Origin: Euprymna scolopes
Lineage: Eukaryota
NCBI GenBank assembly: GCA_053919585.1
Contig: CM132788.1
Reading direction: 5' to 3' (one strand)
Length of the DNA: 64,000 nucleotides
Shown: piece after piece, positions 13,877 through 19,506 of the stretch
Numbering within the stretch: the first letter of the stretch is position 1
How the letters are laid out: every line of letters starts with the position of its first letter
Program-made: the position numbers and the translations under genes
The notes under the pieces: model-generated
Told to the model about the DNA's origin: nothing
The model's database searches: none
The model's input: only the letters and a program-made list of their open reading frames with translations

Positions 13877-13936
<60 letters not shown>

Positions 13937-13982
13937 GAGGTTTGGTTAGCATGCAAGAGGCTCGGGTTTCGAATCCTGAGTT

Positions 13983-14040
13983 CGGATATATCTTACTGAT
14001 GACCCCAATTGAGGGCGAAACTCGCGTCTTGTTCTTCCGG
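13983..14040 (+). ncRNA. Type I hammerhead ribozyme, copy 1 (stems I and II partly decayed)
   Basis: CTGATGA 13996-14002, CCC-AATTGA-GGG, GAAA 14017-14020, C-TCGC-G, GTC 14026-14028. Confidence 0.7.
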
Positions 14041-14323
14041 TTGTTTGACTTCCATGGCTCTTGTGGGCTGCGACGTTGTTTGGCTGTGGAATTAATTATA
14101 TACAGTCTCTCACATTCTGAAAATCCTATCATAAGTTGCTCGCTTGGTTAGCATTGCTGGATGGCGTCGTCCTTTCGAGTTAAAACTCCTACTTGTGAGA
14201 CATCGGCTCGCGGTTATTAGCTGATTAGATGACCGCGTCCCTTGTTGAGATAGGTAAATTTCACAGTCGGATTTCGGCGCGGTTTGCTGGATCTGTATTG
14301 GTTAATAGTAATTCTTGTGTGCA

Positions 14324-14391
14324 GGGCGTTTGCTCGGTTGGCAGAGTGCTTGCATTGCATGCAAGGGGCTCGGGGTTCGAATCCTGAGTTC
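14324..14391 (+). promoter_or_regulatory. tRNA-Ala(TGC)-derived head with Pol III A/B boxes (not an intact tRNA)
   Basis: D-arm GCTC/GAGT, anticodon arm CTTGC-ATTGCAT-GCAAG, B-box GGTTCGAATCC. The acceptor stem does not pair. Confidence 0.8.
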
Positions 14392-14448
14392 GGATGTGTC
14401 TAACTGATGATCCCAAATGAGGGCGAAACTCGAGTCTTGGACTTCTGG
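14391..14448 (+). ncRNA. Type I hammerhead ribozyme, copy 2
   Basis: Stem I GTCTAA/TTGGAC, CTGATGA 14404-14410, CCC-AAATGA-GGG, GAAA 14425-14428, palindromic ACTCGAGT, GTC 14434-14436. Confidence 0.85.
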
Positions 14449-14503
14449 TTCTTTGACTGTCATGGCTCTTGTGGGTAGCGTCGTTGTTTAACTGTGGAAT
14501 TTA

Positions 14504-14577
<74 letters not shown>

Positions 14578-16557: not shown

Positions 16558-17494
16558 AACTCAAATCGTTTTTTCGGATTATAGTTTTCTATTTAAAAAA
16601 AATTCGGAGCATGCGTGATCGCATAAAACAATCTTTGAAAGCTTCTTATACCGACAATGTATTAGTGTTTAAAGTATTTAAATAACCACCAAACTAAATC
16701 ATATATGTTTTTCTATCATTTGCATTTTACGAGTTGTATTTGTTTTACTGCAAGTTGGAATGATTTTCAAGCAATAACTTTTTAGTAAGAATAGAAAAAG
16801 TTTATTACATTAAGTAAAATCCTCTGTGCGACTAACTAAAATTCTGCCCTTTATATTTTAATTTTTAGTAGTATTTCCAATGTTATAGCACAGTATAACA
16901 TTTAATTGCAACTTGAAATTCTTTTAAAACGGTTATTTCTATTTTTAAAAAAATTACAAAACACTACTCCAAAACTAATTAGAGTTTTTTTTTTATAGTA
17001 ATGCGACCAATTTTTCATACGATTCTTTAATTAAAAAACAAAACAAAAACACTTTCTTTTATTTTAAATATTTTTACAGTTAAATATTTATTTTATTCAT
17101 TTGTATACTACGATTTGAGAAGCTAGGACAAATTCAAACATTTTACACTACAAACACCTTAACAAAAAGGGAGCAACTATTTTGAACAGGTAAAGTGTTT
17201 GCATCTAAAAACGTTTAAATGTCATCTTTTTTATTTACTTTTTTTAAATAAAAAAAAATGATTTTTCATATAACTGAATAAAAAAGTTTTAAACTTTCCT
17301 AAAAATAAAAATGGTAGAAACAACAAATAAGTAAATGAAAATAGAAAACTACAATTTTTAGTCACGTGCAAGCGATTCTATAAGTCACTCCGTCGGTCGG
17401 TCGGTCTTTCGATCTATCCGTAAGATTTTGTGCTTGGCCATTTTGGTTATGATCAAAGGTCTGTTGCTAATAGATGTTGTTCTTAGCTTATAAA

Positions 17495-18846
17495 GTTTTT
17501 CTTGGCCTTTTACGCTAAAATCTAAGTGTAGTAACTGTTCCAACAGATAGTGCAAGCAAAGATCATATATGGGGGCAGCCCCACATATGAGACCTTGGTC
17601 AATGTAGGGGCGACCCTTCATACCAATAGTCACTATCCAGCTCCCCTACTCCCCGGGGAGTTCGTCCCCATTTCCCCTTCACTCCTAACATTAAAAATCG
17701 GCCTTGTGCCTTATTTGCTCGGTGGGGGAGCAAATAAATACCCATTTCTTGACCTTTTGGCCAAGATCAAAGTGTAGCATCTGTTCCGGAAGATACTGCA
17801 AGCAAAGACCATATGTGGGGGGCAACCCAACATATAATACCTTGGTCAATGTGGGGGCAACCCTTCATACCAATTTTCACTATCCAGCTCCCCTACTCCC
17901 CAGGGAGAGTTCCCCCATTTCGGCTTCACCCCTCACATTAAAAATCGGCCTTGTGCATTATTTTCTCAGTGGGGGAACAAATAAATACCAACCCCACATA
18001 TAAGACCTTGGTAAATGTCGGCCAACTCTTCATACAAATTGTCACTATCCAGCTCCCCTACTCCCTGGGGAGTTGGTCCCTATCTCGCTTTCACTCCTCA
18101 CATTATAAATTGGCCTTGTGTCTAATTTTCTCGGTGGAGGAGCAAATAAATACCCTTTTCTTGGCCTTTTGGCCAAGATCAAGTGTCGCATATGTTCCGG
18201 CAGATACTGCTAGCAAAGACCATATGTGGGTGCAACCCCACATATAAGACCTTGTTCAATGTAGGGGCAACTCTTCATAACAATTTTAACTATCCAGCTC
18301 CCCTATTCTCGGGGAGTTGGTCCCCATTTCCCCTTCACTCCTCACATAAAAAATCGGCCTTGTGCCTAATTTGCTCGTTGGGGAAGGAAATAAATACCAA
18401 CCCCACACATAAGACATTGGTAAATGTAGGGGCAATCCTTCATACCAATTGTCACTATCCAGCTCCCCTACTTCCCGGGGAGTGGTTCCCTATTTCGCTT
18501 CACTCCTCACATTGAAAATCGGCCTTGTGCCTAATTTTCTCGGTGGAGGAGCAAAAAAATACCCTTTTCTTGGCCTTTTGATCAGGTGTAGTATCTGTTC
18601 CGGCAGATACTGCAAACAAAGACCATATGTGGAGGCAATTCCGCATATAATACCTTGATCAATGTACGGGAACCCCTTCATACCAATTGTCACCATCAAG
18701 CGCCTCTACTCCCCGGGAAGTGTGTCCCCATTTCCCCTTCACTCACATTAAAAATCGGACTTGTGCCTAATTTGCTCGGGCGGGGAGGAAATAAATACCC
18801 TTTTCTTGGCCTTTTGGCCAAGATCAAAGGAGAGTATCTCTTCTTA
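17495..18846 (+). repeat. Higher-order tandem repeat (~245-bp and ~166-bp units) containing U2 snRNA 5' fragments
   Basis: The anchor CC(A/G)CA(T/C)AT recurs at ~17579, 17826, 17993, 18236, 18401 and 18641. Confidence 0.92.
18150..18197 (+). pseudogene. U2 snRNA 5' fragment (other copies ~17499-17540, 17738-17786, 18559-18600, 18795-18846; remnant 17433-17458)
   Basis: Copy consensus TTCTTGGCCTTTTGGCCAAGATCAAGTGTAGTATCTGTTC compared with U2 TTCTCGGCCTTTTGGCTAAGATCAAGTGTAGTATCTGTTC. No Sm site or 3' domain. Confidence 0.9.
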
Positions 18847-19506
18847 CTTCATGCTGTACTTATGTTTGTAACTTTGTGATATAAAGTGGGGGATACGTTT
18901 TCTGTATTAATTTAATGTTAAATGATCACCTACTGTACAATCAGTCCGTCTCAAAGTCATTCAAGTCATGCTCCAGATCATTCAAATAGTTTTGGAAGGA
19001 TTCCAGTTATTTTATAAGCATTCAAATCATTCTTAAGATCATTCAATTCATCCTTAAGTTCATTAAAATTATTTGAAATTCATTTACGTTTTATTTATTA
19101 AAGTCATTTCAACCCATTTTTCGGTCATTTTAGTTTATCTTTAATAATTTAATGACAATCATACATTCACACATTCATTCATTACACGAGAGCGTTGGAC
19201 TAATTGCTATCGCTCTTGTTTTAGGTAAAGTATATTACTAAAGCTTTCATGGAACCTATTATTCTTAATATATATCTAACATTAAACTCTGCAATTAGCG
19301 TCGCATACTTTTTCAGAGAATTTGTTGTTAAGCTCAAATATCCGCTTTGTCAAAAAATAAAAATACACATATTTTTTCACAGGAACGAAGAAATGTTAAG
19401 ATACGAAATTAGGGAGTTACAATAATCAAAAAGTGTGTGAGCACTTTACGGTGATGCTTTAATAAAATAAAACACACGAACACAATAAACACATACAAAC
19501 AAACAT

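What the first reader, a model, noticed from the sequence alone, without database searches (positions are those of the whole stretch)
17355..19220. Tandem array of U2 snRNA 5' modules inside a Helentron-type mobile element
Seen: five copies (plus one remnant) of ATACCC-TTTTCTTGGCCTTTTGGCCAAGATCAAGTGTAGTATCTGTTC inside a satellite-like array. Known: this is the U2 snRNA 5' end, covering stem-loop I, the U6-pairing region and the GUAGUA branch-point recognition sequence. HINE/DINE-1 elements capture host DNA and expand central tandem repeats. U2 is also targeted by Utopia and Keno retrotransposons and forms the head of SINEU elements. Inference: a rolling-circle DNA element captured the functional tip of U2, without its Sm site, and amplified it. 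It could yield U2-mimic short RNAs or act as a decoy target for U2-specific retrotransposons. I do not know this arrangement as described.
Basis: partly seen in the sequence, partly recalled or inferred. Interest (0 to 1): 0.85.

Follow-up and report, generated by a model that had tools for sequence, protein, structure and literature searches.

The report
Jumping element carrying U2-targeting retroelement chains
This squid repeat is a rolling-circle-type DNA transposon whose internal "satellite" consists of small retroelements that insert only into the U2 splicing-RNA gene, alternating with pieces of that gene, so one mobile element has spread another's landing site thousands of times across the genome.

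Summary
Window 17355-19221 carries five U2 snRNA 5' pieces plus one remnant, matching U2 nt 6-46/49. The family consensus is 42/44 identical to this squid's own U2 gene.

The stretch is one copy of a non-autonomous Helentron (HINE/DINE-1 type). It has T-run ends, a 12-nt subterminal inverted repeat, a 5' hairpin and a (GTCK)n microsatellite. It inserted into T5 runs without target duplication (two empty sites). At least 6,110 copies exist.

The interpretation needs a major change. The repeat unit is not an amplified "U2 tip". It is a 202-nt non-autonomous non-LTR retroelement (SINE_H), full-length or 5'-truncated, joined to a U2 piece that is its target or leader. The same unit and sister families occur outside HINEs in head-to-tail chains separated only by ATCTGTTC (U2 nt 39-46, the Keno/Utopia site). 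Intact endonuclease-plus-reverse-transcriptase LINEs sit at the same site in the real U2 array.

The U2 pieces decay neutrally, lack an Sm site, and their GUAGUA pairs with the retroelement's 5' end. A U2-mimic RNA is therefore unsupported. The "landing pad" idea is partly supported.

I found no description of this combination. Not tested: an autonomous Helentron partner, small RNAs, Repbase/Dfam.

The parts
17355..17369 (+). 5' terminus of the HINE: T-run (17355-17359) and 5' subterminal inverted repeat TTAGTCACGTGC (consensus TTAGTCGCGTGC)
   Evidence: Same start in 20 complete copies. The reverse complement GCACGCGACTAA sits near the 3' end. 6,110 genome matches to the 30-nt terminus at up to 3 mismatches, 0 in the control.
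17360..17377 (+). 5' inverted repeat (IR) hairpin AGTCGC-gtgcaa-GCGACT (consensus), its 5' side nested in the subTIR
   Evidence: Read from the alignment of termini. This is the DINE-1/Cg_HINE arrangement described in PMC4067079 and PMC7492417.
17390..17420 (+). (GTCG/GTCT/GTCC)n microsatellite of the left arm, variable in length between copies
   Evidence: The same GTCK/GTCY/GTCC motif class is reported for oyster Cg_HINE left arms (PMC7492417).
17427..17467 (+). Degenerate U2-like remnant in the left arm
   Evidence: Sequence: GTGCTTGGCCATTTTGGTTATGATCAAAGG..CTGTTG compared with U2 nt 4-46. Below BLAST and Rfam thresholds.
17499..17540 (+). U2 module 1 (U2 nt 6-46, 86%)
17544..17742 (+). SINE_H unit, full length (nt 4-202)
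   Evidence: 93% to the SINE_H copy of L076.
17746..17786 (+). U2 module 2 (nt 6-46, 90%)
17787..17989 (+). SINE_H unit, full length (1-202)
17989..18154 (+). SINE_H unit, 5'-truncated (36-202), directly after the previous tail with no U2 piece (the 165-nt unit)
18158..18197 (+). U2 module 3 (nt 6-46, 85%)
18198..18398 (+). SINE_H unit, full length
18398..18563 (+). SINE_H unit, 5'-truncated (36-202)
18567..18600 (+). U2 module 4, with an internal deletion in stem-loop I
   Evidence: 17.3 bits.
18601..18799 (+). SINE_H unit, full length
18803..18846 (+). Junction U2 module 5 (U2 nt 6-49), present in every complete copy next to the right arm
18847..19191 (+). Right arm (RF) of the HINE, origin unknown
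   Evidence: 85-90% identical in 27 loci. No significant similarity to the 5' ends of the U2-specific retroelements.
19192..19221 (+). 3' subterminal inverted repeat (window GCGTTGGACTAA, consensus GCACGCGACTAA), short palindrome and terminal ..CTTGTT
   Evidence: The empty sites place the end inside a T-run.

Best explanation
Window 17355-19221 is one old copy of a very abundant non-autonomous Helentron (HINE) of a squid genome.

Its cargo is a 5' fragment of the U2 snRNA gene (nt 6-49), fixed next to the right arm. Upstream of that fragment lies a head-to-tail chain of a 202-nt non-autonomous non-LTR retroelement (SINE_H). SINE_H belongs to a group of elements that integrate only into the 5' part of U2. 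The group also includes intact LINEs with an apurinic-type (APE) endonuclease and reverse transcriptase, at the Keno-type site.

Full-length units carry U2 nt 6-46 in front of them. Five-prime-truncated units follow the previous unit's tail directly. The U2 piece is therefore both the integration target and, most likely, the co-transcribed 5' leader of the retroelement. Every full-length insertion regenerates the site, which is how a tandem, satellite-like array arises.

The Helentron machinery then copied the composite to thousands of T-rich sites.

Shown: the HINE anatomy and empty sites; the U2 origin of the modules; the retroelement nature and U2 specificity of the unit; the copy numbers. 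Inferred: the order of events (U2 fragment in the HINE first, then retroelement insertions, or capture of a ready-made chain); that the array grew by target-primed reverse transcription; that the U2 pieces have no U2-like function.
For: HINE identity:
- Identical termini in 20/20 complete copies.
- 12-nt subTIR TTAGTCGCGTGC/GCACGCGACTAA, a 5' IR hairpin and a (GTCK)n microsatellite.
- Two paralogous empty sites show insertion into a T5 run with no target duplication.
- 6,110 termini in the genome.
- Helitron-type Rep domains are abundant in the genome, with open frames up to 1,603 aa.

U2 origin:
- 42/44 identity to nt 6-49 of the genome's own U2 gene, which forms a 764-bp tandem array on C9.

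Retroelement nature of the unit:
- The real U2 array is interrupted by 7.1- and 7.6-kb elements with intact ORF1 and ORF2 (APE + RT + zf-RVT). Their 5' junction lies after U2 nt 47.
- Copies of one such LINE are followed by U2 from nt 1, or by ATCTGTTC (nt 39-46) plus the 5' end of the next element.
- In L059 and L076, a copy 98.5% identical to the SINE_H reference (which one search also shows is 98.5% identical to the HINE unit consensus) sits in chains with sister families SINE_X and SINE_C. The copies are separated only by ATCTGTTC, and all share a ~60-nt tail ending AAATACC.
- Of 80 units in 20 HINE copies, 47 are full length and 33 are truncated, at nine different recorded start points (36, 37, 39, 40, 41, 54, 62, 71, 72, 78).
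- 45/47 full-length units follow U2[..46]. 28/33 truncated units follow a tail directly.
- One HINE array (L002) holds a SINE_X unit. L075 and L076 have different SINE families next to the right arm.
- The predicted junction 'tail + U2 nt 39-49 + right arm' occurs 335 times, 0 in the control. One of these lies 620 nt from a HINE 5' terminus.

RNA:
- PolyA RNA-seq reads join the SINE tail to ATCTGTTC plus another family's 5' end (646 reads), and U2 nt ..46 to that family (1,147 reads).

No U2 function:
- Modules are 94.1% identical to consensus, against 93.2% for the body and 93.9% for the right arm.
- GTAGTATCTG pairs with the unit's CAGATACTGC (read from the sequence; hairpin also).
Against:
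- The 3' palindrome of the consensus is only about 3 bp.
- The two LINEs examined share only a 14-18-nt motif and a weak overall similarity with the SINE_H tail (z 3.4-4.8). The true partner LINE is therefore unidentified.
- The K44 LINE tail was not found at the HINE junction (0 matches).
- Units within one HINE copy are no more alike (88.0%) than units of different copies (88.6%). Array differences may have arisen in a few master copies or by recombination, rather than by many insertions into dispersed copies.
- Truncation points cluster at nt 36/37 and 71/72, which could also reflect inherited duplications.
Confidence: 0.78

Rival explanations
1. One reading: the Helentron captured the functional tip of U2 and expanded it as a central satellite by DNA-level tandem duplication. 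The modules give U2-mimic RNAs.
For: HINEs are known to carry tandem central repeats (PMC4067079, PMC7492417). The 409-nt higher-order period fits duplication. Recurrent truncation at nt 36/37 could be one inherited deletion.
Against: The unit exists as an independent 202-nt element outside HINEs, chained at the canonical U2 nt 39 site. It shares its tail with sister families and its target with intact LINEs. The modules decay neutrally, have no Sm site or 3' stem-loops, and show no similarity to real U2 upstream regions. GUAGUA is sequestered in a hairpin.
Confidence: 0.08
2. SINEU-like reading: the mobile unit is the 245-nt 'U2 head + body + LINE-type tail'. The U2 piece is part of the retrotransposed RNA, not a duplicated target. 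The HINE merely received such copies.
For: 45/47 full-length units carry the U2 piece, and 28/33 truncated ones lack it. This is what 5' truncation of a head-bearing RNA predicts, whereas a target duplication would accompany truncated copies too. RNA reads fuse U2 nt ..46 to a retroelement 5' end. SINEs with U2 heads exist in crocodilians (PMC4494074).
Against: Outside HINEs the same unit is separated from its neighbours by only 8 nt of U2. No copy was seen at a non-U2 site with its own target duplication. This reading overlaps the best explanation (leader and target are the same sequence) rather than excluding it.
Confidence: 0.3
3. A local satellite seeded by a U2 pseudogene, not a mobile element.
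For: Tandem structure at this locus.
Against: More than 6,000 dispersed copies share the same two termini on all chromosomes. Empty sites were found.
Confidence: 0.01

Closest known systems
Cg_HINE / Pearl / DINE-1 non-autonomous Helentrons (PMC7492417, PMC4067079)
   Same: 5' subTIR with nested IR, a short GTCK-type microsatellite in the left arm, a central array of ~165-nt satellite-like repeats, a 3' subTIR, T-rich ends, insertion into T/TT without target duplication, and thousands of dispersed copies.
   Different: Here the central repeats can be traced to a U2-gene-specific non-LTR retroelement plus its U2 target. The right arm is long (~380 nt), and the 3' subTIR lies only 17 nt from the end. 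The origin of the central repeats in the oyster and fly elements is not known. Terminal sequences could not be compared, because Table S2 of the oyster paper is illegible in the held copy.
Keno (APE-type) and Utopia (RLE-type) U2 snRNA gene-specific non-LTR retrotransposons (PMC4640811)
   Same: Insertion in the 5' part of U2, with the downstream U2 sequence starting at nt 39 (ATCTGTTC..). Tandem insertions occur. The squid LINEs have an APE endonuclease and RT, like Keno.
   Different: The squid elements also use a second junction at U2 nt 1-6. They have short non-autonomous derivatives that form long chains. Their target is carried in thousands of copies by a DNA transposon. RT phylogeny with Keno was not done.
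U2_sat of Ciona, a U2-derived satellite occasionally hit by YURE elements (PMC4640811)
   Same: U2-derived tandem repeats that serve as a secondary target for U2-related retroelements.
   Different: U2_sat is described as a satellite, not as the cargo of a Helentron. Here the repeat unit itself contains the retroelement.
SINEU of crocodilians (PMC4494074)
   Same: A short non-autonomous retroelement whose full-length copies begin with a U2 5' fragment. No internal pol III promoter.
   Different: SINEU copies are dispersed, with a preference for a Mariner element. The squid units were seen only in U2 context, and their U2 piece coincides with the integration site.

Membership tests
Non-autonomous Helentron (HINE / DINE-1-like) | 11-15-bp subterminal inverted repeats, the 5' one a few nt from the terminus | tested here: met
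   TTAGTCGCGTGC lies 3 nt from the 5' end. GCACGCGACTAA lies 17 nt from the 3' end. Seen in the alignment of 20 copies.
Non-autonomous Helentron (HINE / DINE-1-like) | Short inverted repeat next to and nested in the 5' subTIR | tested here: met
   AGTCGC..GCGACT, 6 nt apart.
Non-autonomous Helentron (HINE / DINE-1-like) | Runs of T at both boundaries; insertion into TT/T-rich sites without target-site duplication | tested here: met
   Two paralogous empty sites (L026 internal repeat; L003 versus L014) show a T5 run split by the element and no other duplication.
Non-autonomous Helentron (HINE / DINE-1-like) | Palindrome (stem-loop) between the 3' subTIR and the 3' end | tested here: inconclusive
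   The consensus TGGCTATCGGCCTTGTT allows only a GGC/GCC stem. The window copy has a 6-bp AGAGCG/CGCTCT stem that overlaps the subTIR.
Non-autonomous Helentron (HINE / DINE-1-like) | Termini shared with an autonomous Helentron encoding Rep/helicase/endonuclease | not tested
   Helitron_like_N domains are abundant (6,421 candidates), but no DNA could be fetched to compare termini.
U2 snRNA gene (Rfam RF00004) | Full-length match at or above the gathering score, with Sm site and 3' stem-loops | tested here: not met
   Best hit is 37.1 bits against a gathering score of 46. Only model positions 1-46 align convincingly. Real genes score 161-179 bits.
U2 snRNA gene (Rfam RF00004) | Sequence identity of the 5' region with the genome's own U2 | tested here: met
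   42/44 over nt 6-49.
Keno-type U2-specific non-LTR retrotransposons (applies to the LINEs in the U2 array and, as dependants, to SINE_H) | Site-specific insertion in U2 with the 3' flank starting at nt 39 | tested here: met
   ATCTGTTC follows the 3' end in 13 of 30 copies of the K44 tail and between all chained short elements. U2 nt 1 follows in another 14.
Keno-type U2-specific non-LTR retrotransposons | APE-type endonuclease plus reverse transcriptase (not the restriction-like endonuclease of Utopia) | tested here: met
   Pfam Exo_endo_phos (E 2e-15, 9.5e-13), RVT_1 (E 6.5e-31, 5.7e-32) and zf-RVT in ORF2 of both insertions.
Keno-type U2-specific non-LTR retrotransposons | RT phylogeny placing them with Keno | not tested
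SINE dependent on a partner LINE | 3' tail shared with the partner LINE | tested here: inconclusive
   Only the GGCCTTGTGCCTAA motif and a C-rich patch are shared with the two LINEs examined (z 3.4-4.8). Three short families share a ~60-nt tail at 95-97%.
SINE dependent on a partner LINE | Variable 5' truncation of copies | tested here: met
   33 of 80 units are truncated at nt 36-78, at several distinct start points.

The most novel reading that the evidence does not exclude
A DNA transposon and a site-specific retroelement lineage form a consortium. The Helentron carries the U2 landing pad, with at least 8,376 dispersed modules against about 1,200 real U2 gene copies. This frees U2-specific retroelements from their scarce natural target. 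The retroelements in turn build the Helentron's satellite-like central array by repeated self-regenerating integration. This could be a general route by which the central tandem repeats of Helentrons (oyster Cg170-type, DINE-1) and some satellites arise.
Probability: 0.35. Interest if true: 0.78.

Novelty: new variant of a known kind. Interest (0 to 1): 0.62.

Why it matters
Two open questions in transposon biology meet here.

First, where do the satellite-like central repeats of Helentron non-autonomous elements come from, and how do they expand? In this family they can be read as chains of a site-specific retroelement and its target. That gives a concrete, testable mechanism.

Second, how can retrotransposons specific for a low-copy target such as U2 genes persist? 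Kojima and Jurka call this a poor survival strategy (PMC4640811). In this squid the target's 5' part has been multiplied and dispersed by another transposon.

The result also warns annotators that thousands of 'U2 pseudogene' hits in cephalopod genomes are transposon cargo.

Tried and rejected
- The Rfam U2 search of the whole genome failed twice. I replaced it with a U2-diagnostic pattern.
- I tested whether the right arm starts with the 5' end of another U2-specific retroelement. No significant similarity: z 0.2-2.0, with one weak value of 4.0.
- I tested whether the autonomous LINE family K44 sits at the HINE junction module. 0 matches at up to 3 mismatches.
- I tested whether the conserved ~60-nt stretch upstream of each module resembles the upstream region of real U2 genes, as another note on this window suggests (a PSE-like promoter). 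No similarity, z about 0. The stretch is the shared 3' tail of the retroelement families.
- I tested recent in-situ duplication. Units of one copy are no more alike than units of different copies, so this is rejected.
- Comparing subTIRs with the oyster Cg_HINEs was not possible. Supplementary Table S2 is illegible in the held text.
- Literature searches for Helentron or Helitron together with U2 or snRNA, and for Keno, found no description of this arrangement. Repbase and Dfam could not be queried.
Full report
**1. The observation**

The stretch 17355-19221 contains a tandem array with periods of 165, 247 and 409 nt (repeat finder). Five pieces in it resemble the 5' end of U2 snRNA, and a sixth degenerate piece sits in the left arm.

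Rfam's U2 model hits the five places at 37.1, 34.9, 34.2, 26.6 and 17.3 bits. All are below the gathering score of 46, because only model positions 1-46 align. No other family hits this stretch.

The genome's real U2 genes were located with a pattern that needs U2 nt 31-53. They form a 764-bp tandem array on contig C9 and score 161-179 bits. The family consensus of the module is 42/44 identical to nt 6-49 of that gene.

**2. The carrier**

A search of the 5.9-Gb genome with the stretch gave 18,048 first-look candidates. In 20 loci that hold both ends, the element starts and stops at the same bases as in the window.

The anatomy is as follows:
- The 5' end is a T-run followed by TTAGTCGCGTGC.
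- The reverse complement of that 12-mer lies 17 nt from the 3' end.
- AGTCGC..GCGACT forms a small hairpin at the 5' end.
- A (GTCG/GTCT/GTCC)n microsatellite follows.
- Then come the array and a ~380-nt right arm.

This is the layout described for DINE-1 and for mite, mosquito and oyster HINEs (PMC4067079, PMC7492417), including the GTCK-type microsatellite of the oyster elements.

Two paralogous empty sites were found among the loci held. In L026 the element sits in a 27-bp tandem repeat, splitting AATGTAA-TTTTT-ATAAYGC. The L003 site has an uninterrupted paralogue in L014, CAAGTGTTTTTGATATAG. In both, a T5 run is split and nothing else is duplicated.

The 30-nt 5' terminus occurs 6,110 times at up to 3 mismatches, and 0 times in the reversed control. 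Helitron-type Rep domains are abundant, with open frames up to 1,603 aa. I could not fetch those loci to compare termini. Membership in the Helentron group therefore rests on structure and insertion behaviour, not on an identified partner.

**3. What the repeat unit is**

The real U2 array is interrupted by insertions of 7.6 and 7.1 kb (L043 and L044). Both have an intact ORF1 and an intact ORF2 with an apurinic-type endonuclease, reverse transcriptase and zf-RVT. They are non-LTR retrotransposons of the kind known as Keno.

Their 5' junction lies after U2 nt 47. Their 3' ends are followed by U2 from nt 22 or from nt 1.

The 3' tail of one of them (K44) has about 1,720 candidates genome-wide. 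Downstream of 30 copies one finds either U2 from nt 1, or ATCTGTTC(T) (U2 nt 39-46/47) followed at once by the 5' end of another element. The nt 39 junction is the one reported for Keno and Utopia (PMC4640811).

One of the sequences that follow is plainly related to the start of the HINE repeat unit. Loci L059 and L076 then show the full picture. Short elements of 186-202 nt lie head to tail, separated only by ATCTGTTC. There are at least three families:
- SINE_C.
- SINE_X.
- SINE_H, which is 98.5% identical to the consensus of the HINE unit.

All begin C(G)GCAGAT(A/G)CTGCA, an inverted copy of the U2 target GTAGTATCTG. All end in a shared ~60-nt tail..ATCGGCCTTGTGCCTAATTTGCTCGGTGGGGGAGCAAATAAATACC. 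The two LINEs share only the GGCCTTGTGCCTAA motif and a C-rich patch with this tail, so the true partner LINE is still unknown.

**4. Anatomy of the HINE array**

With these references, all 20 complete HINE copies read as follows: left arm, then U2[6-46], then a series of SINE_H units, then U2[6-49], then the right arm.

- Of 80 units, 47 are full length and 33 are 5'-truncated.
- Truncation starts are at nt 36/37 (21 units), 39-41 (4), 54, 62, 71/72 (5) and 78.
- 45 of the 47 full-length units are preceded by a long U2 piece ending at nt 46.
- 28 of the 33 truncated units follow the previous tail directly.

Variable 5' truncation is the usual mark of target-primed reverse transcription. The link between the U2 piece and full length suggests that the U2 piece is the co-transcribed leader of the retroelement RNA as well as its integration site.

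One HINE array (L002) contains a SINE_X unit. L075 and L076 have different families next to the right arm, joined at the canonical nt 39 site. The predicted junction 'AAATACC + ATCTGTTCTTAC.. right arm' occurs 335 times in the genome and 0 times in the control. One such place lies 620 nt from a HINE 5' terminus. The same junction with the K44 LINE tail was not found.

**5. Age and selection**

Units of one HINE copy are no more alike (88.0%) than units of different copies (88.6%), and only 11 of 80 have their nearest relative in the same copy. There was therefore no recent in-situ duplication. The arrays were formed before or during the burst that spread the family.

U2 modules are 94.1% identical to their consensus. 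The SINE body is 93.2% and the right arm 93.9%. In the window copy only one of five modules still has an intact GUAGUA context. I see no sign of constraint on the U2 pieces.

**6. RNA**

Two polyA RNA-seq runs of the same species label were laid at 85% likeness. They give family-level cover of the whole element that falls to about zero outside 17343-19205.

- 646 reads run from the SINE tail into ATCTGTTC plus the 5' end of another U2-specific family.
- 1,147 reads run from U2 nt ..46 into that family.
- 311 reads join tail to ATCTGTTC.

Chains of these retroelements, with U2 leaders, are therefore present in polyA RNA. No discrete starts were seen at the modules, but such libraries cannot show small RNAs. 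The arms show an unexplained 5:1 strand bias.

**7. Mechanism proposed**

Shown: a Helentron-type non-autonomous element carries U2 nt 6-49 plus chains of a U2-site-specific retroelement. At least 8,376 HINE-type modules are dispersed over all chromosomes, against 1,235 matches to the real-gene pattern, most of them in tandem arrays.

Inferred: a U2 fragment came to lie next to the right arm. Retroelement RNAs that start in the U2 leader then integrated at or just before a U2 module, each full-length copy bringing a new module. The array grew this way, and Helentron transposition multiplied it. The alternative order, capture of a ready-made chain from a U2 locus, is equally possible.

**8. Comparison and novelty**

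HINEs with satellite-like central repeats, U2-specific retrotransposons, a U2-derived satellite hit by YURE elements, and SINEs with U2 heads are each known. I found no report of a Helentron whose central repeats are site-specific retroelements with their target. Repbase and Dfam could not be checked. I therefore rate this as a new variant of known kinds.

Noticed in passing
window 14398-14442 (+): Rfam Hammerhead_1 (type I hammerhead ribozyme) hit above the gathering score (36.9 versus 34 bits, E 1.2e-5). Another note of the scan reads the surrounding 13936-14505 as a retrozyme.
   Followed up: no
G000:C9 about 168.86-168.97 Mb (L035-L044): The real U2 snRNA genes form a 764-bp tandem array of well over a hundred copies. 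Intact 7.1- and 7.6-kb non-LTR retrotransposons (APE + RT) interrupt it. Their 5' junction lies after U2 nt 47 and their 3' junction at nt 1 or nt 22, so 26-47 nt of U2 are present on both sides.
   Followed up: partly
L054 and L061 (G000:C713): A second U2 array type with a ~558-bp period and a variant stem-loop I (GGCCTCTTCTGGCT), also carrying the K44-type LINE.
   Followed up: no
L063:1800-3300 and L071:1800-3300: Tandem arrays outside HINEs with periods of ~314 and ~243 nt. They are made of other short U2-specific retroelement families plus U2 nt 23-46. In L063 the U2 piece is preceded by an unrelated G+C-rich hairpin (CCCCCCGCTTCGGCGGCACGGGGG).
   Followed up: no
window 17679-17745 and equivalents: The stretch that another note calls PSE-like, about 59 bp upstream of each U2 start, is the conserved 3' tail of the SINE_H/X/C retroelements. 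It shows no similarity to the upstream regions of three real U2 loci.
   Followed up: partly
window 19205-19221 versus the SINE tail: The HINE 3' terminus (consensus ..GGCTATCGGCCTTGTT) shares the 11-mer ATCGGCCTTGT with the retroelement tail. About 0.02 such matches are expected by chance. Possibly the Helentron 3' end derives from a retroelement tail.
   Followed up: no
window 17343-17504 and 18801-19205: PolyA RNA-seq reads over the HINE arms show a ~5:1 first-mate strand bias, while the SINE/U2 part is near 1.5:1.
   Followed up: no
window 17131-17224 (-): Weak mir-927-like hairpin hit (27.4 bits versus gathering score 60, E 0.043) just upstream of the element. Probably chance.
   Followed up: no
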